Positions 13,330-64,000 of a stretch of DNA of 64,000 nt are shown here, in pieces (positions within the stretch are counted from its first letter, which is position 1; the number at the start of each line of letters is the position of its first letter). The notes beneath the pieces are model-generated. The model saw only the letters and a list, made by a program, of their open reading frames with translations. It did no database searches and was not told where the DNA came from. The DNA lies in IMG/VR virus record IMGVR_UViG_3300030616_000016, positions 124,001 through 188,000 of that record. One strand, 5' to 3'. The position numbers and the translations under genes were made by a program.

Positions 13330-13378
13330 TAAGAAAGTGAAAGAAATAGGAGATTTGGTGCCCCCCAAACACCAAATC
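13330..13378 (-). terminator. Probable intrinsic terminator closing the middle module
   Basis: 9-bp stem 13352-13360/13370-13378 followed on the minus strand by TCCTATTTCTTTCACTTTCTT. Confidence 0.55.
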
Positions 13379-13468
13379 ACCCTAAATCAAACCACATTGG
13401 AGGAGTGTCTTCACGCCGCTCATTAATTCAATTGGCACACTCTTTGCAATTAGAGTATACTAGATAGT

Positions 13469-15165: not shown

Positions 15166-15194
15166 TTGACAGAAAAGAGGACTAATAGTATAAT
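15166..15194 (+). promoter_or_regulatory. Perfect sigma70/sigmaA promoter
   Basis: TTGACA (15166-15171), N17, TATAAT (15189-15194), upstream of the HNH gene. Confidence 0.9.
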
Positions 15195-15257
15195 ACTATA
15201 TCATAGTTTCACATATGAACTTCATATACTATTAGCCCTTTTTACATAAGGAGTGGT

Positions 15258-15650
15258 ATGATGGCATGGCAATGTACTGTTTATTCGCGTAGGGGCGACG
15301 AGAATCCCTTGCCTGAAAACTGGCATGAAATTAAACTTAATGTTGTTTTCAGAGATAGATTCACTTGTCAAATGTGTGGCAAGAAGTTCAAGTTTGAAGA
15401 ACTTGATGCGCATCATTTGAAACCCCGTTCTGAAGGAGGTACTAATAACATCAAGAATCTAATAACATTGTGTGAAGATTGTCATGATGTTGTTGAGGTC
15501 AATGGAATTCGCTACCGGGATATTATCAGGAATAAGCATAGACTGCAGCGAGACAGGCAAGAAAAACTTTATGAACTTAAGCATGGGAGCAAGAAATGCA
15601 AGAGAATCAAGAAGAAACCAATAGCGAACAAAGAGAACTGGCAGACATAG
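15258..15650 (+). CDS. HNH endonuclease
   Basis: RDRFTCQMCG...AHHLKPRSEGGTNNIKNLITLCEDCH; AAGGAG SD. Confidence 0.9.
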   Translation: MMAWQCTVYSRRGDENPLPENWHEIKLNVVFRDRFTCQMCGKKFKFEELDAHHLKPRSEGGTNNIKNLITLCEDCHDVVEVNGIRYRDIIRNKHRLQRDRQEKLYELKHGSKKCKRIKKKPIANKENWQT

Positions 15651-19156: not shown

Positions 19157-19233
19157 GCTACGCGTAGTTTGCGTAGCGACCTTTGTCGGTGCGTAGTTTG
19201 CACCGCGAGCCGGCAGATGTAGTTACTGCCGGC
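19157..19233. promoter_or_regulatory. Three adjacent hairpins with different stems and the same GTAGTT loop
   Basis: GCTACGC-GTAGTTT-GCGTAGC; CGGTGC-GTAGTTT-GCACCG; GCCGGCAG-ATGTAGTTA-CTGCCGGC. Confidence 0.65.
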
Positions 19234-20040: not shown

Positions 20041-22332
20041 TTAGAGGACGACCTTCTGGCCGACCATATTGAGAACTGCTTCTTCTTTGCTGACATACCA
20101 GCCAGCCTGCTTGCCGTCCTTGTGCAGCTCCACACTGTACCAGTCGGACTTACGATAAATCCGTTCTGGCTTAGCATGCACTTCCAGTTCTACTCCTTGC
20201 AGGTCACTTACTTGACCCTTGAATCCCCTCACGTCAATAAATCCATCAGGCACATAGGACTCATCAACATCAACAGCAAAGCGTGACTGGATATCACCAA
20301 TATACCTACCAAGAATGGTGATAAAGAACGTATTGCGCGTTCTAACTCCTTCATCGTTCCACCATTTCACTTTACCCTTGTCAGGCTTCTCTGACCAGGC
20401 GATGCGCATCATAGACCCGATGACATCGAGAGGGTTGTCCAGCGCTTCAACATAATCCAAGATCTCATCAGTAAGTGCTCTGAACTCATTTCTGATTTCT
20501 TTATCCTTGTCATCCGAAGTTAGCTCAGGGTCTTTCTTGATCTCGATTACATTTCTGATGGTATTGGACCTGGATTCCCATATAAACGCCCAGAGATCTT
20601 CTCCTTCTGGAGTGATATCAAACGCGTTTACATCGAACGGTGGCTTGGCCTCCATGTTTGTATCAGTGTATTTGGCCAGCTCAAGCTCATCCTGAATCTT
20701 GTCGAAGCCATTCAGGAACTTTGTCAGCTTGCATTTCTCAGCCATTTCGTAGGCCAGAAGCTTTTTAGGGAAAACTTCCGGCTTGCCATACTTATCAATC
20801 AATTTGTAGCCATATGCGACCAGATCTTTCTCGTCTTTCGATACTGGTCTGTTATCAATGACCTTGTGTTTGATATAACCAAGATCCTTGATCAACTTTG
20901 GATCGTCAAACCCATTGGTCAAAGACAGGCACTGTTGCACAAGATCAACACCGCCAATTGTGAGACCAGAATGAATGTCGATAAGCTGATGTGCAAGCTC
21001 GCGCAAGGCTTCATTCTTTGGTTTCGACAAGTCGATCTCCAGCTTCATTGGATCTTCATCGTCCAATGTTCTTTCTGGAGTCTGAGAGATATCCTGAGTC
21101 CATGAGAATGGCTTATGTTTATTTCCGTTCTCGTCTATCACAGTTAGGCCCATGACTTCAGAACTAGAGCCTATTGGTACTCTGAATGCCGCAGCTCCAC
21201 ATTCGACATACTCAGGATCGATGCCCCATATTTTCTTGAGCATCTCTGCGTTACGCGCTTTCATCTCCTCTGTGATTACGTGGAGTGTAAGTGTGTCTCC
21301 ATCACAGTCCGATGAAGTCCATCGCTCTATATTATCTATGGTCTTCTTGCTTGCAAGACCAAGGGTATACTTGTGCGTTCCAACAACCAACGCCATAAAG
21401 TCTTTCTTGCATCCTGTGAACTTTATGTTGCGCTCGTCCACCACAATGGTATTTGGCGGCAGGGTCTCATCACATATCATCATACCCTTGATGCCTTTGC
21501 CTTCATGGGCCATAGCAACACCAATCGCCATGATTTCATCATCGGAAGACTCAAGCTTGAGCTCATTTTCTTCTAGAGTCTCAGCGTCTTCTCTCCAGGC
21601 AATTGGATATGATCCGAATGCTGTTGCATACTGATTCTTCTTGTACGGCGCATCCATAAGCCTGTTCATCTCCTTATTGAACTCATAGAAGGCCACTGCG
21701 TCGTCGACTGATATCTCGAATGGGAAATGAGCCAGATTCTTGGCTACCCATTCTGGCGTGAGCCGCATATTGTCTATCTTATGCGCCCACTCGCATGTTG
21801 AAAGAACGTATGCTTTATTGAACTCGTTCTTTGTCTCTGCGGAAAGGTCGCTGCCGTAAATAGCCGTTGGATACTGCATCGGCAGCATAGACTGCTTCTG
21901 CTTATTTAAGGTTGTCCTTGCCGCTTCCTTTTTTACCTTCTTCCATACGTCTTTGCTTCCATGAATCAACCCATCTACGGTTCTAGCAATGATGACGTTG
22001 ATCGTCTTGCTATCCCAGTACGCTAACCTCCTGAGACTTTCATTAAGCATCCAAAGTATCCTTCTAAGATGCTTAACTCTTATGCGACCATCAACCATCG
22101 CCTGAGATGACTCAAACCACTTAGGTTGAGTCTTAAGGCCGAGATTATTATCGGGAACAAGGTCCCATTTGACCATATTCCAGACGATATCGTTAATGAC
22201 TTTTTCTCTGAGGCCTTTTTCTCTGCCTCTACCCACTGTCTTAGTCGACAATGACACAGGGAAATCTGCAGGCATGTCTGTCCTGCCAAGATCTCCTGCA
22301 TAGACTGTTTTGCTGCTTAACTTACACTTCAT
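20041..22332 (-). CDS. Candidate single-subunit two-barrel RNA polymerase (YonO / cellular-RdRP / crAss-like superfamily)
   Basis: GIKGMMICDETLPPNTIVVDERNIKF (K282) resembles the GxKG...I...KF segment of cellular RdRP-like enzymes. SSDCDGDTLTLH (D342-D346, nt 21309-21295) matches the DxDGD Mg-binding loop. Confidence 0.55.
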   Translation of the reverse strand: MKCKLSSKTVYAGDLGRTDMPADFPVSLSTKTVGRGREKGLREKVINDIVWNMVKWDLVPDNNLGLKTQPKWFESSQAMVDGRIRVKHLRRILWMLNESLRRLAYWDSKTINVIIARTVDGLIHGSKDVWKKVKKEAARTTLNKQKQSMLPMQYPTAIYGSDLSAETKNEFNKAYVLSTCEWAHKIDNMRLTPEWVAKNLAHFPFEISVDDAVAFYEFNKEMNRLMDAPYKKNQYATAFGSYPIAWREDAETLEENELKLESSDDEIMAIGVAMAHEGKGIKGMMICDETLPPNTIVVDERNIKFTGCKKDFMALVVGTHKYTLGLASKKTIDNIERWTSSDCDGDTLTLHVITEEMKARNAEMLKKIWGIDPEYVECGAAAFRVPIGSSSEVMGLTVIDENGNKHKPFSWTQDISQTPERTLDDEDPMKLEIDLSKPKNEALRELAHQLIDIHSGLTIGGVDLVQQCLSLTNGFDDPKLIKDLGYIKHKVIDNRPVSKDEKDLVAYGYKLIDKYGKPEVFPKKLLAYEMAEKCKLTKFLNGFDKIQDELELAKYTDTNMEAKPPFDVNAFDITPEGEDLWAFIWESRSNTIRNVIEIKKDPELTSDDKDKEIRNEFRALTDEILDYVEALDNPLDVIGSMMRIAWSEKPDKGKVKWWNDEGVRTRNTFFITILGRYIGDIQSRFAVDVDESYVPDGFIDVRGFKGQVSDLQGVELEVHAKPERIYRKSDWYSVELHKDGKQAGWYVSKEEAVLNMVGQKVVL

Positions 22333-22368: not shown

Positions 22369-22406
22369 GACAGGCTATATAGCGACCACTAACCATATAG
22401 CCTGTC
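22369..22406. other. 12-bp hairpin upstream of the RNAP-like gene
   Basis: GACAGGCTATAT / ATATAGCCTGTC with a 14-nt loop. Confidence 0.7.
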
Positions 22407-23341: not shown

Positions 23342-23516
23342 ATCACACCTCCATATAAGCACTATTAATATATACTAATGAGCAACACACCCATTAGTAC
23401 TGATGATACAGTGCTATATATCACCATTCACTATATAGACCGCCTTATATAAGGAAGCCTATATAGTAAAGGTATACTATTTATATATGCGCCATATACC
23501 AGGGCGCTCATACATA

Positions 23517-23846: not shown

Positions 23847-23956
23847 AATGATCTCCTTTGCCCATCGGGCTAAAAGTTTTTATTTTCTTTCTCTATAAGC
23901 ACCCCGGTACCGTGCATCGACCAATGCACATCATAAGTACCGAGAAATATCAACCA

Positions 23957-24062: not shown

Positions 24063-24329
24063 GCACATAGTGCTGCTGCAGCGTGTCAACAAGAGCTTGA
24101 CGGCAAGCCCGCCCCTCTTAAAAATAACACTCCAAGACGCCGCCGCCCCATTACATAAAAATGCAACCTAGTAGCTGAGCTACTGTTCATCATAGATAAA
24201 CTTCAAGAAAGACCCCCCGGTACCGCATATATACACTCCCGCATAACAACCTATTCATGCCCCCAAAAATATATATAATATACACTTCACACTCCCTGAG
24301 TGTTATTCTTGAATATTTTATTATTACAA

Positions 24330-24357
24330 TTGAATTCATAACCAATTATGCTATAAT
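24330..24357 (+). promoter_or_regulatory. Sigma70/sigmaA-type promoter with extended -10
   Basis: TTGAAT-N16-TATAAT with TG at -15/-14 (TGCTATAAT). Confidence 0.7.
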
Positions 24358-24949: not shown

Positions 24950-24961
24950 AGGAGCCTTACC

Positions 24962-29973: not shown

Positions 29974-29974
29974 T

Positions 29975-50018: not shown

Positions 50019-50053
50019 CCATCCGTGGCATATAGCCACGGATGGATCCTTTT
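50019..50053 (+). terminator. Hairpin after the tube gene (probable terminator)
   Basis: CCATCCGTGGC-ATATA-GCCACGGATGG then ATCCTTTT. Confidence 0.7.
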
Positions 50054-50063
50054 ATCATGAGTA

Positions 50064-51047: not shown

Positions 51048-51049
51048 AT

Positions 51050-51916: not shown

Positions 51917-51928
51917 GAGGTGATTAAC

Positions 51929-52048: not shown

Positions 52049-52102
52049 CACAAATATTAATATCCAAATTAAGATGAACAATTATTATTAAGGAGCATCA
52101 AG

Positions 52103-52666: not shown

Positions 52667-52675
52667 AGGATATAA

Positions 52676-53440
52676 ATGGGAGAATTATGCGAGGCCTATC
52701 TAGGTCCAGAATATCTTCCAGGTCCTCTTATATCGGGTGAATATTTAAAAGGTGAGGTGGCAGAAGATCCAATTTTGTCACCTCATCTTGCACCTTATAT
52801 CGCCGCTCTATTAAAGAAGTACGACGATATATTTCATGTTAAGTATAATGATCAGGATTTTATAATCCGGCCATTGACTTCAAATGAATATAAGATACTG
52901 TGTAAGCTTAGGTTATACTTCGATCCTCAATTAGGGTTCGAAAAGACAAGGCCTAGGTTTAGTGTTGTAAGCCTAGAAGATATATTTATAGACTGTATTC
53001 TTTATCCTGAGAATGTACTTGATATGGATTTAGATGCATATGTTGTTGATATGCTTATAGAGACTGCAATACAATATTCGGGATGGGATTCACAGGAGGA
53101 TATATTTGTAACAAAAGCTCAAATGCAAGCTCATGTAACATCAGATCTATTAGAGGGCATGTTTACATTTATTAGACGAGCACACCCAGGTCTTGGTGAT
53201 CGCGATCTTGAAAACAAGAATATTATTGATATAATGAAGTTAATAGCAAGTGCTGAATTGATATTGGATAAGCCATTCGAGATAGTCACCAAAGATGATA
53301 AATCAGATGCTTCTAAAATATCAACCGAAGTTATGATCAAAGAAGACTTGGCAGGTCTTAATAAGCTTAATATGCAAGGCTTAAATAAGCCGGAGCTAGA
53401 ATATGCCCGTAACGCCCAGAGAAGAACAGGAAAGAAGTAG
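52676..53440 (+). CDS. Second tail assembly chaperone
   Basis: KKYDDIF...FIIRPLT...CILYP...LIETAIQYSGW, a similar pattern; has its own GAGGA SD. Confidence 0.65.
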   Translation: MGELCEAYLGPEYLPGPLISGEYLKGEVAEDPILSPHLAPYIAALLKKYDDIFHVKYNDQDFIIRPLTSNEYKILCKLRLYFDPQLGFEKTRPRFSVVSLEDIFIDCILYPENVLDMDLDAYVVDMLIETAIQYSGWDSQEDIFVTKAQMQAHVTSDLLEGMFTFIRRAHPGLGDRDLENKNIIDIMKLIASAELILDKPFEIVTKDDKSDASKISTEVMIKEDLAGLNKLNMQGLNKPELEYARNAQRRTGKK

Positions 53441-56400
53441 TGGATGGCTTGGTTATGGCGCGGGATCATTAGCTGTTCTAGCTGGCGCATATATGCTTGG
53501 GAAGAATCCAAAGACGCTATACGCAATGGGCGAAACTTTGGACACCGCAGTATCAGCTATATCAGATGTAACCACCTTTGGTAAGCAACACATAGTAGAA
53601 AATCTTAGTAGAATCACTGGCAAGTTCGGTTCTTCCATAGAGACAGCTGCCAGAAGCCCTTCATCTACAAAAGCACTTAATCCAGAAATATTCAATTCCC
53701 TGCAAGGCGCTCTAAGCGCCTGGGAATCTGGCGCCGCAACTACACAGACACTTAGAGACGCTCTTGCTGCCAAGTTCTCTAACGTAACGACGGTTAGACC
53801 GGGTGTACGTAATCTTCAAGTAAAAGAGATAACACAAGCATTCAGTGATATCACTCCTGACGACCCTTTCACTTTATTTGGAAGATCTATAGATAAGAAG
53901 GGCGCTGGTCTTCTTAAACAGGCTCAAGAGATAGGAATTGTAGACAAAGACTGGGTTGCTGACAAAGGCATGTTTATTGATGGTCAGAGATTGGTTGACG
54001 CCAATATATTCAGGCCTGAGAAGTGGGGAGAATCTCTTGTAAAAACATTACGTGGTGCTACTGGCGGATTCCTTACCGACTCATTACTGCCAAGTACCCA
54101 TCTTCTTCGAGAGATTCCAGATATAGCTGAGATCTCAACAAAAGGGTTGGGCAAGCATATAAAAGAGGGAACACTAGATAAAGCCTTTAAGATTGGCGAT
54201 CAACTTGTTGGTATAACAAAAGATAATTTTGTTGTTGACTTGCCTAAGCTTCGTGTTGGCCCAGTAGGAAATGCTATTTCTAAGGCACACGCTATAAGAA
54301 AGGGGCTTGTAAGACATAGAACAGTTGATGAGATGAAGGAGCTTCTCGCTTCCAGGGGGCAAGATCTTAATCCGCGTCAAGAAAAGCTATATAGAGCATT
54401 AGAAAATAGATTCCTTAGCGAGTATGTTGGCATTGGTCCTCAATACGCAAGTGAAACGGCGCTTCCAAAGATGCTGCATGGCTGGCTGGCAAAGTTCTAC
54501 CAGACGGACCTTAAGCCAATATCGATGATTCCAGGCAAGTCATTCGATGAGGTATGGGAAAATCTAAGCATTGGTCAAAGAGTCAAGGTTATGGCCAAAG
54601 GAGATGTTGATAGCGTCGCCTGGGCCAGAACTTCGATTGCTGGCGATCAAGACATTCGATCTTTTGAACAGATACAAGAGATAAAAAGAGCTATCCATGG
54701 AGAAAGCTGGGAAGCTGCGCTGGATCCGAGTGGTGAAATATCTAAAACAACATCGGTGTTTGGAAGAAGATCAGTAACCAATGCAGAGCAGTTTATGGCA
54801 GAAATGCTTGATGAAGAATTCAAGCACACTATGTCACACAACTACTATGCCTATGATACTGCTGAACTTGCTGGTAACTGGGCACATACTGTCTTCACGA
54901 CTCCATTTAGAATAGCATCCAACATGTTTGGATTTGGACTCAAGCATGACTCGTTAGGAAAGACTGCGCTCAGAGCCACGGTTGGCATTCCTATGGCCGG
55001 ATATCTCGCATGGCAGGGAGCAAACTATTTAGATTTTCTTACTGAGCAGACAACGACATTTAGTCCAATCAAAGGTGTTGCCAGAACATATGCAGAAGCT
55101 CAGATAGCCAAACAAAGCATGGCTAATCTTATAGGCATATCATATGCATCTAAAACAGCAGAAAGTATGATTGGAATAGATATCGATTCTCCTATTTCCG
55201 TTGCGCTTAGAAGCATAGGACTGCCTATACTTGGAGCTAAGATTGGACAAAAGATAAATCCTGGAATGGGACGACCTGGTATGTATGTCGGTATTGGGCT
55301 AGCCGCGCTTACTTTATCAGACGACCTATCTAGAGATGCAGATGAATTAAGAGATATATATGAAGGAAGAAAAGAAGTTCCTGTTAGAAAGTCTCGCTGG
55401 TGGATGCTTGGATGTTTTGACCCTCACCAAAGCGTAATGCTTGAAGATGGAAGCCTTGTCCATGCAGAAGATGTAGACAGTGGAATGGTAGTCATTAACG
55501 ATATAGGAGAATATACAGAGGTGACTAATGTCTCTGTAAGAATTACCGATAAAGACGAGGAGCTAATTTCTATTCTGCCTCATGGATTTCCTTATCCAAC
55601 AAAAATAACAGGCAATCATGAAGTTCTTGTCCACAGACGTCCTTGTATCAAGCCATATACATATAAAACTGGATGTCATCCAAGACGAATCACGAATAGT
55701 TCGTGTAGATCTTGTCCGAATGCCTCGCCGGATCTTAATCTGTCATATGTCAGAGCCGATGAGCTGAGGCCGGACGACTTTCTTATTCTGCCTAGGCTAA
55801 AATGCAACACCTCTATTGGGCTTATCGACCTGTCTGATTACCATGATCTATTTGTCATCGATAAAGAAAAAATAGCAGCAGGTCAAAGATTGCATGGTGG
55901 TGTTCGGCGTGCTCCAAAAAGCAAATATACTAATAGAATTATACATCCCGATAAAGATCTCGGTATGCTTTTAGGTTGGGTTTTAGCAGAAGGAAGTAAG
56001 CATAGCGACAACTCTATTGAATGTGTGTATAATATTAGTGAAAGCGATTTTGCCTTGCAAATGGGTAAAATAGCGCATGCCAAGTTTGGAGCTAGTTATA
56101 GCCTATCTGAAAGAGATGGTAGTACTGGGAGAATTGTTATAGGTAGTAAATTTTTACTCGGTTTTTGTACCAGTGTTGGCATACTGCCAAATAAAACTCC
56201 GAACATACGCAGAATGCTAGATTATGGTGAGTGTTTTGTTAAAGGGTTTGTCATAGGTGCTGTATATGGAGATGGAAGCTATACCGACGGCCATTGGAGA
56301 TTCAAGGCGAAAAGACTACAGACATGTATTTTCTTGAGAGATATGATCCATGCAGTCGGAGGAGCTGCTTCTATATGTCGAAACTCGTCTATGCTTGAAG

Positions 56401-58841
56401 GCAAGAGGTTTGATGCGTATTCAGTCACAATAATAGAATTAGATTTTGCTCTTATTAAGCATTATTATAAAGGAATACCAAAAACCAAGCAGTTAAAATC
56501 TGCAATTGGCTGTAAAGACTATGTTTTATATACAATCAGAAGCATAGTCGCCTCCGATCCTCCTGAAATTGTTTATGACTTCCATGTTAGAGACAGGAAT
56601 AGCATCTGTTTGCCTGGGCATGTTGTTCACAACTCAGATCCCTTTGAAGGTGGAGACACTGATTATTACAGGCCTCACCTTATAGCCACAATGCTTTCTG
56701 ATACCTCTGCCATGGAAGCAAAGTATGGTTCCAAGTCCGCATATTGGTCTCATGGCACAATGTTCCCTACGCCTCATAATGTATTTGGCTTGAGTATACT
56801 GGCTGACCCATACTATGTAGAAAGAAAGCATTACTATGATAGGCCGTATCCAATAACAGGAAGATCTAATCTTGCAGAATTTCCTATCTGGGGCAACATA
56901 CTTGATGCTACTCTTGGAGAGGTTATTAAGCCTACCAAGGTAATGCATGAAAATGAACTGGCGCATTATATAACTCAAACCCCTGAGTTCTCTGGAGACA
57001 AAGGACTGCAGAGTGTAGCTCAGCAGCTGTCTCTAGCACAAATTAGGCCTGGTAAGGTGCTGCCAAGAGTAGAAGGAACGCAGGATGACATTGGTCATGC
57101 AATATATGACATGACTGAATTTGCTGGATTAAAGGGATTTCTATTTACGTCTCTCAAGAAGCAAGTCACTGGAAGCCCTGACTTCTCTGACCAAGGCGCA
57201 AGATGGGCTAGTGCAGATGATATTTATAATAAATCTGATGCATACTATGATCTACAGCTTGGTGGTATGCTAGGTGCAACCGAGTTCTTCAGAAGATTTT
57301 TACCACATAGACAAAACCAAATAGACTATGTTAATCCTCTAAGCAATGAAGCTCCGGCATGGCTCCCTGGTAAAAGGTCTGTTTTTGGCGATACAGACTT
57401 TATAGATTTCCATAGCTCAGATCCATACACTCGTATCAAGGAGGGGTCTAAGCGTCTTCCAGGTGCTCAGTATGAAGCTATACACGAACTACATTCTGGT
57501 AAAAAAGGCGAATATGATGCTTTTGATAGAATGAAGATATTGGCTGATGTCAGCCCATATTCTAATGCCTTCAAGTACTATAAGAACATAGTGGATAAGA
57601 TGGCTCAGGACGGCCAGCTAGACGGCTATTGGATGGATGAATACCTTGAAATAGACAGGAGAATTAAAGGAGAAGGACTGCCCGACTTTGAAGCAGAGAC
57701 AGCAAGTAAAGAGCTTGGTATTTCTGGTGCAGCTGCTGGGACTGCTGGCCTACTAAATAATCACCTTAGAATACCATGGGTAGGTACTAAGTTAATGAGC
57801 ATGGATCAAGATCCGCTGGTAGACTATCAAGAGAAGATTTCATTCAATAATGACTTCAATGATTGGACTAAACCAATAGACACTATGTTGATGCCATACA
57901 TGCGCGCACAAAGTGCAAGAGGAGCTATCTCTGGAGCTTTTGGTGGTGCAACACTAGGTGTTCTTAGCTCAGCTGCTGGAGGTTCATACGCCGGTACTGT
58001 AGGAGCTATCGGAGCAGGCGTTGGAACAGTGATGGGATTGGCCGGCGTTAATGCTCCTGAAAATGAAATCAGAAGAAGGTCTATGGAAGAATACTTCGAT
58101 AGCTTAGAATATCTGAAGTACAATAAACTAGCTGACAAGGCTGGCGAACAAGGCAATATTGCTCTTGCAAATAGATTAAGAAGAATGTCTAAGAGAACCA
58201 TGGTAGGACTCGACTATTCTCAAGACACAACCTCTTTCTATAAAGCAGCTTACAGCGCTCTCCCAAAACCGGACAGGCAGTATCTGCAGGCTTTTATCCA
58301 GGTTGATCCGGGTAAAAGACCTGAAGTCCTTGACAAAGTTCCAGATTATATGCAGCCTATTCTTATGCGTCTATGGAAAGATCCAAAGTCCGAAGCTGAT
58401 GCCGGCAAGCTATCAAGAGTAGACCAAAACAATAGAGCCCATCAGGCTGCTTTATCGTATGTAAACAGTCACGGCGGCGTCCCAGATGATGATTCTATGG
58501 TATGGCATCCAGATATTAGCATTGAAGATGTCAAACTAAAGACCATTAAAAATCTTGGTGCTGACATACATAACTTTGGGTTTTGGGGAACTGATGAGCG
58601 AGATCTTGAAAGAACGCGGCCTTATATCAAACCCCTTCCATTCTCATATAATACAAACACTTACCAATCTAATAGGTTGAATTTTACTAATAATATGTTA
58701 CAATATGGTTTTAGCAATGTGTATGTTGATTTGATAAGAAATCCTAGCAGGCAGCCAGAAAATGTATATTCAATTAATATTCAGAGAAATAGACTTGGTG
58801 ACATTGCAGGGTTTGACAGCAGGTCTGAGGGAAGGTTCTAA
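53403..58841 (+). CDS. 1812-aa tail tape-measure-like / ejection protein (with intein)
   Basis: Follows the chaperones; Gly/Ala-rich hydrophobic segments; VPVRKSRWWMLG/SDPFEGG...YYRP and DPYTRI..G..RLPG motifs. Confidence 0.7.
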   Translation: MPVTPREEQERSSGWLGYGAGSLAVLAGAYMLGKNPKTLYAMGETLDTAVSAISDVTTFGKQHIVENLSRITGKFGSSIETAARSPSSTKALNPEIFNSLQGALSAWESGAATTQTLRDALAAKFSNVTTVRPGVRNLQVKEITQAFSDITPDDPFTLFGRSIDKKGAGLLKQAQEIGIVDKDWVADKGMFIDGQRLVDANIFRPEKWGESLVKTLRGATGGFLTDSLLPSTHLLREIPDIAEISTKGLGKHIKEGTLDKAFKIGDQLVGITKDNFVVDLPKLRVGPVGNAISKAHAIRKGLVRHRTVDEMKELLASRGQDLNPRQEKLYRALENRFLSEYVGIGPQYASETALPKMLHGWLAKFYQTDLKPISMIPGKSFDEVWENLSIGQRVKVMAKGDVDSVAWARTSIAGDQDIRSFEQIQEIKRAIHGESWEAALDPSGEISKTTSVFGRRSVTNAEQFMAEMLDEEFKHTMSHNYYAYDTAELAGNWAHTVFTTPFRIASNMFGFGLKHDSLGKTALRATVGIPMAGYLAWQGANYLDFLTEQTTTFSPIKGVARTYAEAQIAKQSMANLIGISYASKTAESMIGIDIDSPISVALRSIGLPILGAKIGQKINPGMGRPGMYVGIGLAALTLSDDLSRDADELRDIYEGRKEVPVRKSRWWMLGCFDPHQSVMLEDGSLVHAEDVDSGMVVINDIGEYTEVTNVSVRITDKDEELISILPHGFPYPTKITGNHEVLVHRRPCIKPYTYKTGCHPRRITNSSCRSCPNASPDLNLSYVRADELRPDDFLILPRLKCNTSIGLIDLSDYHDLFVIDKEKIAAGQRLHGGVRRAPKSKYTNRIIHPDKDLGMLLGWVLAEGSKHSDNSIECVYNISESDFALQMGKIAHAKFGASYSLSERDGSTGRIVIGSKFLLGFCTSVGILPNKTPNIRRMLDYGECFVKGFVIGAVYGDGSYTDGHWRFKAKRLQTCIFLRDMIHAVGGAASICRNSSMLEGKRFDAYSVTIIELDFALIKHYYKGIPKTKQLKSAIGCKDYVLYTIRSIVASDPPEIVYDFHVRDRNSICLPGHVVHNSDPFEGGDTDYYRPHLIATMLSDTSAMEAKYGSKSAYWSHGTMFPTPHNVFGLSILADPYYVERKHYYDRPYPITGRSNLAEFPIWGNILDATLGEVIKPTKVMHENELAHYITQTPEFSGDKGLQSVAQQLSLAQIRPGKVLPRVEGTQDDIGHAIYDMTEFAGLKGFLFTSLKKQVTGSPDFSDQGARWASADDIYNKSDAYYDLQLGGMLGATEFFRRFLPHRQNQIDYVNPLSNEAPAWLPGKRSVFGDTDFIDFHSSDPYTRIKEGSKRLPGAQYEAIHELHSGKKGEYDAFDRMKILADVSPYSNAFKYYKNIVDKMAQDGQLDGYWMDEYLEIDRRIKGEGLPDFEAETASKELGISGAAAGTAGLLNNHLRIPWVGTKLMSMDQDPLVDYQEKISFNNDFNDWTKPIDTMLMPYMRAQSARGAISGAFGGATLGVLSSAAGGSYAGTVGAIGAGVGTVMGLAGVNAPENEIRRRSMEEYFDSLEYLKYNKLADKAGEQGNIALANRLRRMSKRTMVGLDYSQDTTSFYKAAYSALPKPDRQYLQAFIQVDPGKRPEVLDKVPDYMQPILMRLWKDPKSEADAGKLSRVDQNNRAHQAALSYVNSHGGVPDDDSMVWHPDISIEDVKLKTIKNLGADIHNFGFWGTDERDLERTRPYIKPLPFSYNTNTYQSNRLNFTNNMLQYGFSNVYVDLIRNPSRQPENVYSINIQRNRLGDIAGFDSRSEGRF
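55413..56633 (+). mobile_element. 407-aa intein with LAGLIDADG endonuclease in the tail protein
   Basis: MLG|CFDPHQ, ITGNH, LLGWVLAEGS and AVYGDGS, VYDFHV...VVHN|S (canonical). Confidence 0.9.
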
Positions 58842-61800
58842 TGCCTGACAAGCCAGAACAAAGAAGTGGATCAGTAGCGCCTTGGTTGGTTGGCGGAGGG
58901 CTATTAGCTTTTGGTGGGTATCAGGGATATAAGCACTTCGGCCAGAAGCACTTAGGAAATATGGCAAATAATCTAGGCGATGAGATTAAAGCTGTTGTGC
59001 CATCAGTAGAACAAACCGAACAAATAATCAAACCAAGTTCTTCCACAGAATTCTGGCATAAGTTTGACAGAGCAGGAACTCCTGCAGCTGGCATTGGAGC
59101 CACAAATTCATTTATGCATGATATAGTTGATGTCGAAGATGCACACTATAAAGGATTCGATGAGATTTTAACTCCTAAGAGAGCTGCTGCTTATAACAAA
59201 ATTGTGACAGCTCAGCTTACCGACTTTCAGTCTGTTATGAATAATACACACGGAACCAATCTTCTTAATATAGAAGCAATCAACGAGTCTATAAATAGTG
59301 CAAATACTGGTTTTATTGATGGCATCAGCGAAAGAGCAAAGAGAAATACAGAAACAGCTGGCTTAATAGGAAGGTCTGATGTAGAAGATATATTTTTTGC
59401 TCATTATGGAAGAAAGGGTAAAAGAGCTCAAGAGTTCATTGCAAGAGAGCAGGCTGCTGTATCACAACTGGAAGATATAGCAAGCCGGCTTACAGCATCA
59501 ACTGGGCATCAAGTTAAAATACAGGCCATTAACCGCAGCGGTGTAGCTCCAGAAATAGGGCTCAGAGTAGGTGGCGAGTTTATTTCTATGGGCGCCGCCA
59601 CTGGAACAAGGCTTCAGTTTGGTTCAAATGTATATCAGGGGCCTCAAGCCATTCTTGGCAGAACAGCTGAAGGCAGGCTAAAGACCATGACCTTTCATGA
59701 AGCTTCTGTAAATGTTCTTGAACAAAAAATGGGCGAGCTAAAAGGCATCAAGTCTTCAAGTCAGCTTAGATCCAAGATATCCGGTATATTATCCGAGCCT
59801 AGAGAGGCCGCAATCTTTTCTAGTCCTGAAGATAAGATGAGAGCTATAGCTGGTGTTCCTGGACAACCTATGAGCGCTGCCGATGTCGCTAGAAGTGGTA
59901 ACATTGTAACTATGCCGAGTATAGTTAAAGAATCAGGCGCACAAGCTTCAAGAGATGCTGCTGAAACTCTTAGAAGAATAACTGAATGGGCAGGCAAAGA
60001 GGATTGGGACGAGACTACTCGCGCAAGAATGTTTCATATAAAACCTGGACAAAGGATTACTCCAGAGCGCGTGCTAAGGCATTTCGTTACAGCTGTTAAA
60101 GGAGATAAGGTAGACAGACTGACTTTCTCTGCTTTTACTTCTTTGAAAGCTCTTACGGTTGGAGGGATGCTCACTCCGTTTCAAAACATAGCCAAGGAAG
60201 GCGGCGAGGAACTACGCACAGGATTGCTTAGAAAATCTCAATCCGCCAAATATAAATATAATAAGTATTATGGCTATGGAAGGGAAATGAGACGGCAGAA
60301 TCTTGCTGGGCTTCTTGCAGGTGAGGGTTCTGAGCGTTTGGCTGGAAGCGTAAGTGGCAAGGTTCATGCTATAGATAAAGTTCAGAAATTAATTGATGGT
60401 GAATGGGTAGACGTTCCAGACAAACTAGTTGGCGCGTTAGGTGGTAAATTTTCAGGTGGTTCTGGTGTTATGGCTATTAGTGAGGAATTCGGCGATTTAT
60501 CTCACGAGTCATCTGGAGATTATATGCTCAAAAAGATAAGCGGCTCTCCTAACAAGAAAATCAAAGATACAATTAATGAACTTGCAAGAAAGGGCAAGCT
60601 AGATGTAAGGAATCTAAAAGCAGCGGGTATTACAGTTCGCAAAAAAGATGCTCAGGGGCTATTGCGAACTGAAACAGGAAGCCTGGAATTTAGCCAGGCT
60701 GCTTTAAAGCAAGCAAGCGAGACAGAAAACTCTCTGGTTATACCCGGTAAAAGACTTAGAAAAATAAGTGAATCTGGCTATGCTTTTAGGCTTGGGCCTA
60801 CTAGTGTTTCAGCTACAAGAGGTACTCGATTTATAGGCAAAGGCTCAGAGGGAGTTCTTGGTGCTTTGTGGTCAACGAATATTAAACCGGAAGTAAGATC
60901 TCAAATGGCTTATGCCACAATACAGAGCCTAATGGAAGAATCAGATATCAAATATTCTCGCAATTTAGACGAGTTTGCAGCTACTATATCTGGTGAACTA
61001 GATAGAGCCGATCCTAATGCCAGATATTTTAAAGGCGTAGAAGGCAATCAAAAAAGATGGCAGCAGCTTACAGATCTAATGACTGAAAGAATGCAGAAAG
61101 AAGGAGTAGATAAACGTAGCCTGGATAAGTTTAGAGCATCTATGGAAGGATATGGTCCTGGTAAGACCATAGAATTTGCTGCTGAGGGTCAACACTACAG
61201 AGCTAGAGCTACGACACTAACTGGTACTGCGTTTCCTAGAATGTATCCTCTTGAAGAGGAGACAGCATTGCATGGTACAGTAGGCAGATATAAATCTGAG
61301 TATACAAAGAAGCTGGATGATTTTAATAAAGCATTGGCTGGACATGAGGACCTTCCTGGTGTTCAAAGATTCATGGAAGCTCAAACAAAGAAACATAGTA
61401 TTCTTGAAGATGTTTTACGCCACGAATCTGTGCCAGATACACTGATAAGAAACTTCAATGAAGCTGAAACTCAACAGCTAGAGGCCATAAGAGAAATACA
61501 AAGAATGGAAGGCGGTCCAATAAAAGGCATAGAGAAGAAGTTTATTGCACTCAAAACAAGCGAAGAACAGTTTATGTCCAAGCTTACACAGAGAGCGCAA
61601 AGTACTCCACGCAGATATAGACCACAAGACTTTATGATGATGGCTATAAAAGCTCATGCTGACCCTGAAAACAGAGACACAGGTGTGCTTGAGTATCTGC
61701 TTCGCATGCAGGAAGGTAGCCAGGCTCGCCGCAGCTTTCAAAACGTGGCTATGGCAGCTGAGCCTTTATTTGGAACAAGTACCAAACAGATTATTGAAGA

Positions 61801-64000
61801 AGTAGACAAGGGTATTCTATTTGGCAACAAGGCCTTTAGTTTATCAAATCCTGATGACGTCGAACAGCTTAAAGTTATTACCAATGTCATGGGTCAGATT
61901 AAAGATGCGGCAGATTCTGCAGACGACGAAGTTGTCAATGCCATGTCCATACAAGACATTCTTAGAAGATCTAAAGGCCAATTTGAAGCTGCTGGATTAG
62001 GAGATGTTAATCCAGAAGAGCTTCTAAGTAAAAATCTTGCTATTACAGGAATGCCAGAAGGCACGTTCATGGATCTGGAAATTGAACAGGCTCTTAAAAC
62101 AGGTACTGATAAGTTTCTTGTTTCTTCAAAGAATCAAAGAGAAATGATACTTCCATCTCTTGGAGCAACAGGAAGGCTGTTTGGCAAAGGTCCTAATGCT
62201 GAAATGATATCTTTGAATGAAATGCGCAGGTCTATACTTGGTGCACACCATGGGCTGTCTCTTATGTTAGAAGACGGAGAAAACATAGACGCTCTCAGAT
62301 CCTCATATGCTACATTTCTTAAATCGCTTGCAGAGGAAAGCCATAAAACCGGTTTGTTTGGTAGAGCAGGCGAATTGCAGTGGACTAAAAGCGCGTATCC
62401 AAACATCAGACAGTTTGATTTCTCAGATATGAGAAGAATGGATTATCTTCGTCAGGCTAAGGATTGGGCTGGATACCAGGCAGAAGCTGCTACTGTTCAT
62501 ATAAGCAGAGAAATGGCTGAAGAGTTTGGTGCGCTCGACAAGCTTACCAAAAAGGGCGCCGATGATCTTTATGCTCATATGCAGTCTTATCCCGGCCTTA
62601 CTCCTGGAATGCAGAGGACGGTTAAGCTTAGACTAGATGAAAACCTCAGAGGCAGGCAAATGAAGGTTGGATATGGAATTGCAATAGCCGGAGCCAGAGA
62701 CTTTGATGCTGACCGTGTTGCTTTGATGTATCTAGGTGATGAGCATGAAGTTGTTAGAAATCTTTTGAACAACGATCCTAATTTATCCAAAAGCGATGCC
62801 AAGGCTATGGCTCGTAAATTTGTTTCTAGCATGAAGCAAGATTTTAGAGCAGATGCAGAGTCTATAGCATATCTACAACATTCTGAGATGAAGCTTGCAC
62901 AGCGCGTTGCAGACGCAAACTTTTTATCAGCAACAAACAAGTTACATAAAGATGCTAATGTTAATGCTGTTAGAGATATCGTCAATTATATGGGAAGGAT
63001 TGATGATGTAGAAATTAAGTCTGGTGCTTACGACGATGAGATTCAGCGAATTCTATCTAAGCACGATATATCTGGTACAGCCGCAGATACGATGATCGAC
63101 GTATTTAAAAAGAAGCTTGTAGCATCTAAAGAACTTGGTGTAACTACAAACAAGCTTATGATGATGCGTAATACTCTTGCCGATAATATGATTAGAGACA
63201 AAGGAAGCAGGCAAGCTACTGATTTCGCGATACAATACTTTCATCAAATAACACAGTCTCTTATTAGCGCTAGAAAGCATGGAGAAAAAGGTGATGCTTC
63301 TAGAGAATTAATCGAACTTCTGCAAGGTAGATCTGTTGATGGTGATTTCAAGAACCTTACAAGAGCACACAAGGATAAAATAGGCGAGCTGTTAGGAGAA
63401 TCTCTTGTTGAAGGCGGTCTTGCTGGAGAGGTAAAAGACAGATGGTTGTGGAGAAGTGTTGATGAAGGCGTGTATGATTCTAACCAAGTTAAGTGGATAA
63501 TAGATGAGCAAGCACAAAAGCTAAACGTAAAATCATTCAATGAATTAAAAGAAACCTTTGTTAACTTGGCAGAAGAAAATCTTAGAAGAAGAAATGAATG
63601 GGACGAGTCTAATTTCTTGTTTGAAACAACCATGAAGAAGTCTGGGCTTGGTAGATTTGCAGAGAGAGGTCAATGGTCTGTTAGACAGTTTATTGAACAG
63701 GCTCCTAAGCATATGAAGAAGCTTGGTGCCTTTGTTAAGAAGCAAGCAGATCTTCCTGAGTTTGCTCGTCTTGTTTCTCATATAACTGGAATCAATGCTA
63801 TTGCAGCTTATGCTGACGACGCATCAAGGGCTACTATAAGAGAGGCTGAGAAGACAGCTTCAGATGCTTTAAATTATGCAAAGGCTGGCGATGCAGCTGC
63901 TGACATAGCAACTTCCAAAGGTAAATCATGGCTTACCAGACTGTTTGATAAGTCAGACGAATACTTGGCTGGATCACCAAAAGCTAAGTACGCACTTGCT
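58841..64000 (+). CDS. >1720-aa virion protein with an RNA polymerase beta-prime-like catalytic barrel (partial, no stop in window)
   Basis: Open frame from ATG 58841 to the window end (frame spot-checked). GLFGRAG...VHISREMAEEF...HMQSYPGL...GRQMKVGYGIAIAGARDFDADRVALM (62351-62730), DFDAD at 62699-62713. Confidence 0.65.
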   Translation, partial: MPDKPEQRSGSVAPWLVGGGLLAFGGYQGYKHFGQKHLGNMANNLGDEIKAVVPSVEQTEQIIKPSSSTEFWHKFDRAGTPAAGIGATNSFMHDIVDVEDAHYKGFDEILTPKRAAAYNKIVTAQLTDFQSVMNNTHGTNLLNIEAINESINSANTGFIDGISERAKRNTETAGLIGRSDVEDIFFAHYGRKGKRAQEFIAREQAAVSQLEDIASRLTASTGHQVKIQAINRSGVAPEIGLRVGGEFISMGAATGTRLQFGSNVYQGPQAILGRTAEGRLKTMTFHEASVNVLEQKMGELKGIKSSSQLRSKISGILSEPREAAIFSSPEDKMRAIAGVPGQPMSAADVARSGNIVTMPSIVKESGAQASRDAAETLRRITEWAGKEDWDETTRARMFHIKPGQRITPERVLRHFVTAVKGDKVDRLTFSAFTSLKALTVGGMLTPFQNIAKEGGEELRTGLLRKSQSAKYKYNKYYGYGREMRRQNLAGLLAGEGSERLAGSVSGKVHAIDKVQKLIDGEWVDVPDKLVGALGGKFSGGSGVMAISEEFGDLSHESSGDYMLKKISGSPNKKIKDTINELARKGKLDVRNLKAAGITVRKKDAQGLLRTETGSLEFSQAALKQASETENSLVIPGKRLRKISESGYAFRLGPTSVSATRGTRFIGKGSEGVLGALWSTNIKPEVRSQMAYATIQSLMEESDIKYSRNLDEFAATISGELDRADPNARYFKGVEGNQKRWQQLTDLMTERMQKEGVDKRSLDKFRASMEGYGPGKTIEFAAEGQHYRARATTLTGTAFPRMYPLEEETALHGTVGRYKSEYTKKLDDFNKALAGHEDLPGVQRFMEAQTKKHSILEDVLRHESVPDTLIRNFNEAETQQLEAIREIQRMEGGPIKGIEKKFIALKTSEEQFMSKLTQRAQSTPRRYRPQDFMMMAIKAHADPENRDTGVLEYLLRMQEGSQARRSFQNVAMAAEPLFGTSTKQIIEEVDKGILFGNKAFSLSNPDDVEQLKVITNVMGQIKDAADSADDEVVNAMSIQDILRRSKGQFEAAGLGDVNPEELLSKNLAITGMPEGTFMDLEIEQALKTGTDKFLVSSKNQREMILPSLGATGRLFGKGPNAEMISLNEMRRSILGAHHGLSLMLEDGENIDALRSSYATFLKSLAEESHKTGLFGRAGELQWTKSAYPNIRQFDFSDMRRMDYLRQAKDWAGYQAEAATVHISREMAEEFGALDKLTKKGADDLYAHMQSYPGLTPGMQRTVKLRLDENLRGRQMKVGYGIAIAGARDFDADRVALMYLGDEHEVVRNLLNNDPNLSKSDAKAMARKFVSSMKQDFRADAESIAYLQHSEMKLAQRVADANFLSATNKLHKDANVNAVRDIVNYMGRIDDVEIKSGAYDDEIQRILSKHDISGTAADTMIDVFKKKLVASKELGVTTNKLMMMRNTLADNMIRDKGSRQATDFAIQYFHQITQSLISARKHGEKGDASRELIELLQGRSVDGDFKNLTRAHKDKIGELLGESLVEGGLAGEVKDRWLWRSVDEGVYDSNQVKWIIDEQAQKLNVKSFNELKETFVNLAEENLRRRNEWDESNFLFETTMKKSGLGRFAERGQWSVRQFIEQAPKHMKKLGAFVKKQADLPEFARLVSHITGINAIAAYADDASRATIREAEKTASDALNYAKAGDAAADIATSKGKSWLTRLFDKSDEYLAGSPKAKYALA

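What the first reader, a model, noticed from the sequence alone, without database searches (positions are those of the whole stretch)
13330..64000. Possible two-polymerase programme: injected RNAP, hairpin-rich early module encoding a second RNAP, and late operon
Seen together: a beta-prime-like domain in a virion-type protein, a DxDGD protein in the early-type module, conserved-loop hairpins (19157-19233), palindromic CTATATAG sites upstream of the early RNAP gene, and a GTGAGTAA leader before the head-decoration and sheath genes. Known: N4 (virion RNAP on hairpin promoters, then a second phage RNAP) and P23-45 (virion plus non-virion crAss-like RNAPs) use this logic. Inference: a similar cascade in a myovirus lineage. 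Host-type promoters at 15166 and 24330 show host RNAP is still used.
Basis: inference. Interest (0 to 1): 0.85.

Follow-up and report, generated by a model that had tools for sequence, protein, structure and literature searches.

The report
Possible two-RNA-polymerase jumbo phage, unproven
A 231-kb uncultured contractile-tailed phage carries two orphan proteins with RNA-polymerase-type aspartate motifs, one in its early gene block and one among its giant tail proteins. This fits a known virion-plus-second-polymerase scheme, but neither fold could be confirmed.

Summary
The window is bases 124001-188000 of IMG/VR contig 3300030616_000016 (231,647 bp). It comes from a jumbo myovirus whose tail module is collinear with that of Bacillus phage 0305phi8-36.

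**Confirmed in the sequence:**
- A 763-aa early-strand protein (20041-22332, minus strand) carries DCDGD.
- An 1834-aa late-strand protein (58841 to past the window end) carries DFDAD.
- Three conserved-loop hairpins lie at 19157-19233.
- CTATATAG is enriched upstream of the early genes.
- Sigma70-type promoters lie at 15166 and 24330.

**Not supported:** GTGAGTAA occurs at chance frequency and is absent from the relative.

**Evidence that both proteins are two-barrel RNA polymerases is suggestive only:**
- Language-model neighbours of both are almost all RdRP/YonO-like (PF05183).
- The orthologue of the 1834-aa protein gives a sub-threshold Pfam LEF-9 hit on the motif region.
- The best profile match of the 763-aa family to 0305phi8-36 gp99 aligns motif to motif.
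- Both genes co-occur on the only related contig.
- Gene positions resemble P23-45 and crAss-like phages.

Both proteins are near-orphans, and both AlphaFold models failed (pLDDT 35 and 39), so the fold test is undecided. I put the full cascade at about 0.4. If real, it is a new variant of a known kind.

The parts
20041..22332 (-). p763, the candidate non-virion (second) two-barrel RNA polymerase, in the early block
   Evidence: ORF. Language-model neighbours are almost all RdRP PF05183 / YonO-like, top score 0.89. An exhaustive HMMER search found only 2 relatives, at 23-24% identity. There are no Pfam, PHROG, NCBIfam or PDB hits. The AlphaFold model had pLDDT 35.
21295..21309 (-). DCDGD motif of p763 (aa 342-346)
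   Evidence: Motif located. The three Asp columns are invariant in alignment A1, but P0003 reads DGDD and needs a gap. The best hhalign match to 0305phi8-36 gp99 aligns this motif with gp99's GADTDGD, E = 0.011.
58841..64000 (+). p1834, the candidate virion RNA polymerase or tape-measure-position giant protein. It runs past the window end and is 1834 aa in full.
   Evidence: One relative, P0002, is 46-48% identical. P0002's motif region hits Pfam LEF-9 at E = 4.3e-5 and 22.7 bits, below the 27-bit cut-off. Of the 100 nearest named Atlas clusters for aa 900-1720, 86 are RdRP, top score 0.73. The AlphaFold model had pLDDT 39.
62699..62713 (+). DFDAD motif of p1834 (aa 1287-1291)
   Evidence: It is invariant in P0002, within a conserved block GYGI..ARDFDADR.A.MYLGD. 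A conserved Pro lies 36 residues upstream; the comparison with about 33 in bacterial beta-prime rests on a beta-prime segment recalled from memory (by eye). The DFDxD form is the crAss-like virion RNAP signature (bioRxiv 10.1101/2020.03.07.982082).
53403..58841 (+). p1812, giant tail or ejection protein, orthologue of 0305phi8-36 gp145. It contains an intein at about 55413-56633.
   Evidence: Collinear BLASTP matches to gp145, best E = 1e-22. The match skips aa 671-1077. gp145 was found in virions by mass spectrometry according to its GenBank note. Weak Pfam Intein_splicing hit.
19157..19233 (.). Three tandem hairpins with a conserved loop (AAACUAC on the early-gene strand)
   Evidence: The first hairpin also scores as terminator-like. 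No Rfam match. No equivalent hairpins lie downstream of the homologous gene in L007/L008.
22369..22406 (.). Hairpin with a 12-bp stem that contains CTATATAG, 37-74 nt upstream of the p763 start codon
22758..22793 (.). Overlapping hairpins with CTATA in the stem, upstream of the 110-aa early ORF
23414..23466 (.). Cluster of TATATA-centred palindromes and a hairpin, with two CTATATAG copies and CCTTATATAAGG, upstream of the 72-aa early ORF
   Evidence: The same type of hairpin occurs three times at L005:8661-8791 in the relative.
23902..23929 (-). Conserved element: the hairpin GTGCA-8 nt-TGCAC followed by GGTACCGGGG, 56 nt upstream of the first early ORF. Candidate early promoter.
   Evidence: Nearly identical in the relative at the same distance, 54 nt. 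CGGTACCGGGG occurs twice against 0.07 expected.
24215..24225 (-). Second copy of CGGTACCGGGG, same orientation, about 310 nt upstream of the first copy
   Evidence: Conserved in L005 and L006 with a spacing of 272 nt.
24330..24357 (+). Sigma70-type promoter with an extended -10 box (TTGAAT-16-TGcTATAAT) at the head of the rightward operon
   Evidence: Conserved in the relative as TTGAAA-16-TGaTATAAT.
15166..15650 (+). Perfect sigma70 consensus promoter (15166-15194) followed by an HNH endonuclease gene (15258-15650), on the strand opposite the early genes
   Evidence: Pfam HNH hit at E = 1e-14.
24392..53440 (+). Rightward operon: FkbM methyltransferase, p1230, terminase (31776-34877), portal (37320-40316), protease/scaffold, major capsid protein (43106-44461), sheath (47946-49295), tube-like protein (49315-50007), probable tail chaperones
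42222..42229 (+). GTGAGTAA, copy 1 of 2. Judged to be chance.
   Evidence: Two copies against 1.98 expected.
47906..47913 (+). GTGAGTAA, copy 2 of 2. Judged to be chance.
   Evidence: The segment carrying it is absent from the relative's region upstream of the sheath gene.

Best explanation
This is a jumbo contractile-tailed phage of the 0305phi8-36 structural lineage that probably runs a P23-45-like or crAss-like transcription cascade.

**Proposed steps**
1. p1834 is the middle of three giant proteins encoded between the tail chaperones and the baseplate. It carries a C-terminal two-barrel RNA-polymerase module at about aa 900-1720, with catalytic DFDAD.
2. p1834 is built into the tail lumen and ejected with the DNA.
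3. It starts leftward transcription of the early block from conserved non-sigma70 elements in the divergent region, the two GGTACCGGGG motifs.
4. That block encodes p763, a second YonO/RdRP-like single-subunit polymerase with DCDGD. p763 takes over later early or middle transcription.
5. The rightward structural operon is read by host RNA polymerase from the conserved extended -10 promoter at 24330.

**Shown:** the genes, the motifs, the synteny, the co-occurrence and the conserved regulatory elements.

**Inferred:** both folds, virion packaging, which polymerase uses which element, and the timing.
For: **p763**
- All the nearest language-model clusters are RdRP/YonO-like, top score 0.89.
- D.DGD is expected in only 2.6% of shuffles.
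- The Asp columns are invariant at 23-24% family identity.
- The best hhalign match to the YonO-like gp99 of 0305phi8-36 is catalytic motif to catalytic motif, E = 0.011.
- Its size is typical of YonO-like enzymes.
- It sits in the early block near the divergent control region, as P23-45 gp64 does (PMC10770324). 0305phi8-36 gp99 is likewise near the genome end (PMC2147016).

**p1834**
- DFD.D is expected in 1.5% of shuffles.
- The motif lies in a fully conserved block.
- The orthologue hits Pfam LEF-9, the beta-prime-like baculovirus RNAP subunit, on exactly this stretch at E = 4.3e-5.
- Of 100 named neighbours of aa 900-1720, 86 are RdRP.
- Its flanking genes p1812 and p2283 are orthologues of 0305phi8-36 gp145 and gp147. 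gp145 was detected in virions by mass spectrometry; gp147 is annotated as the baseplate hub.
- The arrangement of three giant genes mirrors phi14:2 gp67-gp66(RNAP)-gp65 (bioRxiv 10.1101/2020.03.07.982082).
- P23-45 fuses its virion RNAP to the tape measure protein (PMC10770324).

**Co-occurrence and regulation**
- The only related contig, Logan SRR17165158_47671, carries homologues of both genes in the same layout.
- The GGTACCGGGG pair and the sigma70 promoter are conserved between the two phages.
Against: - Neither protein has a significant hit in Pfam, PHROGs, NCBIfam or PDB sequences.
- The window's own p1834 gives no LEF-9 hit.
- hhalign finds nothing against P23-45 gp64, phi14:2 gp66 or a two-sequence YonO-like profile, and nothing between the two candidates themselves.
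- Both AlphaFold models are unusable (pLDDT 35.5 and 38.9). The p1834 model is almost all helix, as a tape measure protein would be.
- The Atlas scores of 0.89 and 0.73 lie in the range the tool says shuffled proteins can reach.
- P0003, the p763 homologue in the co-occurrence genome, has DGDD rather than DxDxD.
- 0305phi8-36 gp146, which occupies the same position as p1834, is called the tape measure protein and has no DxDxD.
- Virion presence is inferred from gene position only.
Confidence: 0.4

Rival explanations
1. There is no phage RNA polymerase. p1834 is simply the tape measure or ejection protein, p763 is an unrelated early protein, both Asp motifs are chance or ordinary metal-binding sites, and host RNA polymerase transcribes everything.
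For: - About 30% of shuffles contain D.D.D, and 8 such motifs occur in the window's large frames. One is a DADGD in an Ig-like head protein.
- No significant family or PDB hit exists for either protein.
- p1834 occupies the slot of 0305phi8-36 gp146, the putative tape measure protein, which lacks the motif.
- The low-confidence p1834 model is nearly all helical.
- Good sigma70-type promoters exist.
Against: - Two independent proteins both draw RdRP-family neighbours.
- The LEF-9 hit covers 62 residues, not just the 5-residue motif.
- The match to gp99 is motif to motif.
- The Asp residues are conserved across very diverged homologues.
- The leftward early block shows no strong sigma70 promoter at its head. 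Instead it has a conserved GC-rich element present twice.
Confidence: 0.25
2. Only p763 is a polymerase. As proposed for 0305phi8-36 gp99, it would be a single YonO-like non-virion enzyme made early by host RNA polymerase, and p1834 would be a structural tape measure protein.
For: - 0305phi8-36 has the same tail-gene layout plus one YonO-like RNAP and no DxDxD in its middle giant protein (PMC2147016; PMC7824862).
- The evidence for p763 (Atlas score 0.89) is somewhat stronger than that for p1834 (0.73).
Against: - The DFDAD block and the LEF-9 sub-threshold hit in the p1834 family.
- The conserved non-sigma70 element at the head of the early block would still need an explanation.
Confidence: 0.2
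3. Only p1834 is a polymerase, a crAss-like single virion RNAP. p763 would be something else, for example a nucleic-acid enzyme with an acidic metal site.
For: - crAss-like phages manage with one virion RNAP plus the host enzyme (bioRxiv 10.1101/2020.03.07.982082).
- P0003 carries the irregular DGDD motif.
- No Pfam RdRP hit appears on any of the three family members.
Against: - The language-model neighbours of p763 are uniformly RdRP/YonO-like.
- The gp99 motif alignment.
- A known YonO-like control, the gp99 segment, itself scores only E = 0.026 against Pfam RdRP, so a missing hit says little.
Confidence: 0.1

Closest known systems
Thermus phage P23-45: gp96 (tape-measure-fused virion RNAP) plus gp64 (non-virion RNAP) (PMC10770324)
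   Same: - It has two single-subunit two-barrel RNAP candidates, each with a DxDxD motif.
- One sits in the tape-measure position of the tail module.
- The other sits in a leftward early block that diverges from the rightward structural operon (one search compared).
- Late genes are apparently left to host RNAP.
- Distinct conserved non-sigma70 motifs lie at the head of the early genes.
   Different: - P23-45 has a long non-contractile tail; this phage has a contractile one.
- The RNAP module is N-terminal in gp96 (DFDGD at aa 779 of 5002) but C-terminal here (aa 1287 of 1834).
- No sequence or profile similarity to gp64 was detected.
- The two candidates here show no similarity to each other, whereas gp96 and gp64 cluster together.
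- Activity and virion location are not shown here.
crAss-like phage phi14:2 gp66 virion RNAP, with flanking gp65 and gp67 (bioRxiv 10.1101/2020.03.07.982082)
   Same: - The motif has the DFDxD form (DFDID there, DFDAD here) and lies about two-thirds of the way along a roughly 2000-aa protein.
- That protein is the middle of three adjacent giant virion-module genes.
- Middle and late genes there are read by host sigma70-type RNAP.
   Different: - phi14:2 is a podovirus and has no second phage RNAP.
- hhalign finds no similarity.
- p1834's neighbours are homologous to the 0305phi8-36 gp145 and gp147 tail proteins, not to gp65 or gp67.
Bacillus phage 0305phi8-36: gp99 YonO-like RNAP and the gp145/gp146/gp147 tail giants (PMC2147016; PMC7824862)
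   Same: - It is a jumbo myovirus.
- p1812 and p2283 are homologous to gp145 and gp147 in the same gene order.
- It has a single-subunit RdRP-family RNAP gene in the early arm.
- The catalytic-motif contexts are alike: GADTDGD in gp99, GADMDGD in P0004 and SSDCDGD in p763.
   Different: - gp99 is 1218 aa and is recognised by Pfam PF05183; p763 is not.
- gp146, the middle giant protein, has no DxDxD and no similarity to p1834.
- No virion RNAP has been proposed for 0305phi8-36.
Coliphage N4: virion RNAP on DNA-hairpin promoters, then RNAP II
   Same: The logic is the same, an injected polymerase followed by a second phage polymerase. Hairpins are abundant in the early block.
   Different: - N4 enzymes are T7-like and not two-barrel (own knowledge).
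- N4 promoter hairpins have 5-7-bp stems and 3-nt loops at separate promoters (own knowledge). Here the loops are 7-9 nt and the three hairpins are in tandem in the middle of the module.
- No T7-like domain was found.
phiKZ-like jumbo phages: multisubunit virion and non-virion RNAPs (PMC7598289)
   Same: It is a jumbo phage with a virion plus non-virion polymerase scheme.
   Different: Those enzymes are split beta/beta-prime multisubunit enzymes that standard profiles recognise. Nothing of that kind was detected in this window.

Membership tests
YonO/RdRP-like single-subunit two-barrel RNAP (PF05183 clade), tested for p763 | DxDxD (usually DbDGD) metal-binding triad in the beta-prime-like barrel | tested here: met
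   DCDGD is present in p763 and DMDGD in P0004. P0003 has the irregular DGDD.
YonO/RdRP-like single-subunit two-barrel RNAP (PF05183 clade), tested for p763 | Significant profile similarity to the family (Pfam PF05183 or a member) | tested here: not met
   None of the three family members hits Pfam. hhalign to gp99 gives only E = 0.011 over 23 columns and nothing to a two-sequence profile. The language-model neighbours are RdRP, but at a score of 0.89.
YonO/RdRP-like single-subunit two-barrel RNAP (PF05183 clade), tested for p763 | Two double-psi beta-barrels forming one active site, with basic residues supplied by the second barrel | tested here: inconclusive
   AlphaFold2 on 3 sequences gave pLDDT 35.5 and pTM 0.27, so no fold search was justified. 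An invariant GKG.K lies 64 residues before the motif, but it could not be assigned to a barrel.
YonO/RdRP-like single-subunit two-barrel RNAP (PF05183 clade), tested for p763 | Template-dependent, rifampicin-resistant RNA synthesis | not testable with these tools
   This needs biochemistry.
crAss-like / P23-45-like virion two-barrel RNAP, tested for p1834 | DFDxD/DFDGD motif conserved in orthologues | tested here: met
   DFDAD is identical in P0002, within a conserved 20-residue block.
crAss-like / P23-45-like virion two-barrel RNAP, tested for p1834 | Beta-prime-type barrel recognisable by profile or structure | tested here: inconclusive
   LEF-9 scores 22.7 bits (cut-off 27), E = 4.3e-5, on the orthologue only. 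No PDB or hhalign hit. The AlphaFold model had pLDDT 38.9.
crAss-like / P23-45-like virion two-barrel RNAP, tested for p1834 | Protein present in the virion and delivered to the cell | not testable with these tools
   There is positional evidence only. The gene lies between orthologues of 0305phi8-36 gp145, which mass spectrometry found in virions, and gp147, annotated as the baseplate hub.
P23-45-type two-polymerase cascade | Both polymerase genes present together in related genomes | tested here: met
   Both homologues lie on Logan contig SRR17165158_47671 in the same layout. That is only one relative, so n = 2 genomes.
P23-45-type two-polymerase cascade | Two distinct phage-specific promoter motifs that map to transcription start sites | tested here: inconclusive
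   Candidates are the conserved GGTACCGGGG pair and the hairpins with CTATA in the stem, found in both phages. There are no transcript data.
N4-type hairpin-promoter system | T7-like virion RNAP, and promoter hairpins with short stems and 3-nt loops upstream of early genes | tested here: not met
   No T7-like domain was found. The hairpins at 19157-19233 have 7-9-nt loops and are in tandem in the middle of the module.

The most novel reading that the evidence does not exclude
A sparsely sampled lineage of 0305phi8-36-like jumbo myoviruses carries two previously unrecognised, mutually unrelated families of single-subunit two-barrel RNA polymerases. One forms the C-terminal half of the giant protein in the tape-measure position of a contractile tail. 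If so, tail-lumen delivery of a virion RNAP is not a peculiarity of Thermus siphoviruses. A conserved hairpin-plus-GGTACCGGGG element would be its early promoter. The middle giant protein of Acinetobacter phage ME3, which carries GGDHDQD, could be a further case.
Probability: 0.35. Interest if true: 0.75.

Novelty: new variant of a known kind. Interest (0 to 1): 0.55.

Why it matters
Virion-delivered and second phage RNA polymerases of the two-barrel type are known from only a few systems: crAss-like phages, P23-45 and phiKZ-like phages. They are so diverged that each new family adds information on how far this ancient fold can vary and on where eukaryotic RNAi polymerases came from.

A tape-measure-position polymerase in a contractile-tailed jumbo phage would extend the idea of transcription coupled to DNA ejection to a different tail architecture. 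It would also supply two new orphan RNAP families and a candidate promoter for biochemical study.

If both proteins turn out not to be polymerases, the finding becomes a caution that DxDxD motifs alone are poor evidence.

Tried and rejected
**Searches that found nothing significant**
- Pfam, PHROGs and NCBIfam scans of both proteins, their homologues and sub-regions. The only result was the LEF-9 sub-threshold hit.
- PDB sequence searches with single sequences, full profiles and motif-region profiles.
- The word-index protein search returned none for p763 or its alignment and one relative for p1834.
- The exhaustive HMMER search for p763 returned two relatives.
- IMG/VR and JGI metagenome scans with proteins, alignments and a back-translated catalytic-block pattern returned only the contig itself.
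- tblastn of both proteins against 50,697 GenBank phages gave no match.
- hhalign against P23-45 gp64, phi14:2 gp66, 0305phi8-36 gp146, ME3_36 and a YonO-like pair, and between the two candidates, found nothing.

**Structure prediction**
- AlphaFold2 on both candidates gave pLDDT 35.5 and 38.9.
- I did not run fold search, because the tool itself warns that low-confidence models give meaningless matches.

**Readings rejected**
- GTGAGTAA as a late leader: chance frequency and not conserved.
- The N4 analogy for the hairpin trio.
- The noncoding stretch 15877-16474 as a structured RNA: z = -1.5.
- Known RNA families in the early block: Rfam found none.
- ME3_36's GGDHDQD as support: it has no homologues in GenBank phages against which to test conservation, and a D.D.D motif is expected by chance in about 30% of proteins this size.


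Full report
**Origin and layout**

The window is bases 124001-188000 of IMG/VR contig IMGVR_UViG_3300030616_000016, which is 231,647 bp long. It has no tRNA genes. It has no near match among 50,697 GenBank phages.

Small ORFs on the minus strand fill bases 1 to about 23,850. From 24,392 a long plus-strand operon runs to the window end. That operon is a myovirus structural module, and it contains:
- terminase large subunit (31776-34877);
- portal (37320-40316);
- protease/scaffold;
- major capsid protein (43106-44461);
- sheath (47946-49295);
- a tube-like protein.

After two probable chaperone genes come three giant ORFs:
- p1812 (53403-58841);
- p1834 (58841 to 64345 in extended coordinates, L002:6839-12343);
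- p2283 (L002:12343-19194).

A Baseplate_J protein follows them.

**The observation**

Both motifs are present. p763 (20041-22332, minus strand) has DCDGD at aa 342. p1834 has DFDAD at aa 1287.

The motif alone is weak evidence:
- D.D.D appears in about 30% of composition-matched shuffles of either protein.
- Eight D.D.D motifs occur in the large open frames of this window.
- The specific forms are rarer, DFD.D at 1.5% and D.DGD at 2.6%.

The three hairpins at 19157-19233 are real. They share a GTAGTT loop core, they are unique in the window, and they fold better than shuffles.

CTATATAG is enriched, 7 copies against 1.6 expected. Four copies lie in the gaps upstream of p763 and of the small ORFs before it.

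GTGAGTAA is at chance, 2 copies against 1.98 expected. It is absent upstream of the sheath gene in the relative.

Both sigma70-type promoters exist. The perfect one at 15166 drives an HNH endonuclease gene on the opposite strand, so it belongs to a mobile cassette.

**Is p763 a polymerase?**

No curated family or PDB sequence matches it.

An exhaustive HMMER scan of 1.84 billion cluster representatives found only two relatives, P0003 and P0004, at 23-24% identity. The three Asp columns are invariant in their alignment. However, P0003 needs a gap and reads DGDD.

The ESM Atlas feature search places p763 among RdRP (PF05183) / YonO-like clusters almost exclusively, top score 0.89. The tool itself rates that level as a lead only.

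The tail genes pointed to Bacillus phage 0305phi8-36. That phage encodes gp99, a YonO-like RNAP (PMC2147016; PMC7824862). The best hhalign match between the p763 family and gp99 aligns the two catalytic motifs, E = 0.011 over 23 columns. The local contexts resemble each other by eye.

As a control, a gp99 segment around its own motif scores only E = 0.026 against Pfam RdRP. The lack of a Pfam hit for p763 therefore says little.

AlphaFold2 with the three-sequence alignment failed, with pLDDT 35.5.

**Is p1834 a polymerase?**

It has one relative, P0002, at 46-48% identity. DFDAD sits in a block that is fully conserved between the two.

P0002's motif region hits Pfam LEF-9, the beta-prime-like subunit of the baculovirus RNAP:
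- E = 4.3e-5 and 22.7 bits over 62 residues;
- this is below the 27-bit cut-off;
- the window's own protein gives no hit.

For aa 900-1720, 86 of the 100 nearest named Atlas clusters are RdRP, but the top score is only 0.73.

AlphaFold2 failed here too, with pLDDT 38.9. The model is mostly helical.

No similarity to phi14:2 gp66, P23-45 gp64 or p763 was detectable.

**Context**

p1812 is collinear with 0305phi8-36 gp145, best E = 1e-22. Its GenBank note says gp145 was identified in virions by mass spectrometry.

p2283 shares domains with the baseplate hub gp147.

p1834 therefore occupies the slot of gp146, the putative tape measure protein. It shares no sequence with gp146, and gp146 has no DxDxD.

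Two characterised systems offer a parallel:
- P23-45 fuses its virion RNAP to the tape measure protein and encodes a second RNAP in its pre-early genes (PMC10770324).
- In crAss-like phages the DFDxD polymerase is the middle of three giant virion genes (bioRxiv 10.1101/2020.03.07.982082).

The published survey of genomes with two RNAPs does not list 0305phi8-36 or ME3.

**Co-occurrence**

P0003 (the p763 homologue) and P0002 (the p1834 homologue) lie on the same 78.7-kb Logan contig with the same divergent layout. It was passed, but with only one relative.

P0004 comes from a 5.8-kb contig of the same metagenome as the window. It shows no wider context.

**Regulatory elements**

The divergent region (23847-24391) is conserved in blocks between the two phages.

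Pointing rightward is an extended -10 sigma70 promoter:
- TTGAAT-16-TGcTATAAT in the window;
- TTGAAA-16-TGaTATAAT in the relative.

Pointing leftward are two copies of CGGTACCGGGG, against 0.07 expected. The downstream copy is preceded by a conserved 5-bp hairpin. It lies 56 nt (window) or 54 nt (relative) before the first early ORF. This is the best candidate for a phage-specific early promoter.

The CTATATAG sites are mostly halves of hairpin stems. The same type of hairpin, with CTATA in the stem, occurs three times in the relative's early intergenic region. They could be promoters, terminators, processing sites or operators.

The hairpin trio at 19157-19233 could not be checked for conservation, because the relative's contig ends before that point. 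The P0004 contigs have nothing similar.

**Verdict**

The two-polymerase reading is coherent. Several independent weak signals support it, together with synteny and one co-occurrence. The decisive fold test remains open, because both families are nearly orphans.

| Claim | Estimated probability |
|---|---|
| p763 is a two-barrel RNAP | about 0.65 |
| p1834 contains a two-barrel RNAP | about 0.6 |
| The full cascade is real | about 0.4 |

The concept is already known from P23-45, crAss-like, N4 and phiKZ-like phages. If true, this would be a new variant: a contractile-tailed jumbo phage, two new RNAP families, and a polymerase in the tape-measure position.

Noticed in passing
window 31776-34877, 37320-40316, 53403-58841: Three late genes each carry an intein: terminase large subunit, portal (LAGLIDADG_3 hit at aa 602-645) and p1812. 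In p1812 the intein spans aa 671-1077. It is bounded by RWWMLG|C and HN|S, and the intein-less 0305phi8-36 gp145 aligns straight across the gap. The relative's p1812 homologue is 1395 aa, which is consistent with it having no intein.
   Followed up: partly
window 11599-11885: An iteron-like tandem array with a period of about 20 bp: CTTTTTATAAGTTAATCTGA three times, then about five degenerate copies. It could be a replication origin or a regulator-binding array.
   Followed up: no
window 13381-13729: A complex noncoding boundary where G+C rises from about 0.35 to about 0.45. CTTGTAGAT occurs five times on the minus strand here; the whole window has 6 copies against 0.72 expected. The copies flank a hairpin with a 12-bp stem (13533-13560). 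There is also a 25-nt direct repeat and a strong plus-strand terminator-like hairpin at 13708-13728.
   Followed up: partly
window 15166-15853: A cassette on the strand opposite the early genes: a perfect sigma70 consensus promoter, an HNH endonuclease (Pfam E = 1e-14) and a small HTH-like ORF. It is probably a mobile element.
   Followed up: partly
window 24392-24949: An FkbM-family methyltransferase is the first gene of the rightward operon. It is absent from the related phage (L005), where the 119-aa homologue of the next gene comes first.
   Followed up: partly
window 26281-29973: p1230 has N-terminal motifs that resemble a DEDDh 3'-5' exonuclease (LDLETRGL, HNLQFE, HRSRAD by eye). No Pfam, PHROG or PDB hit backs this. 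A 1209-aa homologue is conserved in the relative.
   Followed up: partly
L002:12343-19194 (just beyond the window end): p2283 combines a staphylococcal-nuclease domain (Pfam SNase, E = 1.4e-8, aa 251-372) with a C-terminal region homologous to the baseplate hub or lysin proteins of the jumbo phages 0305phi8-36 and ME3.
   Followed up: partly
L017:9717-14528 (Acinetobacter phage ME3, ME3_36): The middle giant tail gene of ME3, in the same position as p1834, has GGDHDQD at aa 1217 of 1603. It has no detectable similarity to p1834 and no homologues in GenBank phages, so this may be chance.
   Followed up: partly
L005:10001-12253 (P0003): The p763 homologue in the related phage reads ADGDD where the others have DxDGD. 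The identical protein was seen on three contigs from two sequencing runs, so a sequencing error is unlikely.
   Followed up: partly
window 15877-16474: A 598-nt G+C-rich stretch without an ORF has loosely repeated units with spacings of 71-80 and 146 nt. It does not fold significantly better than shuffles (z = -1.5) and has no Rfam match.
   Followed up: yes
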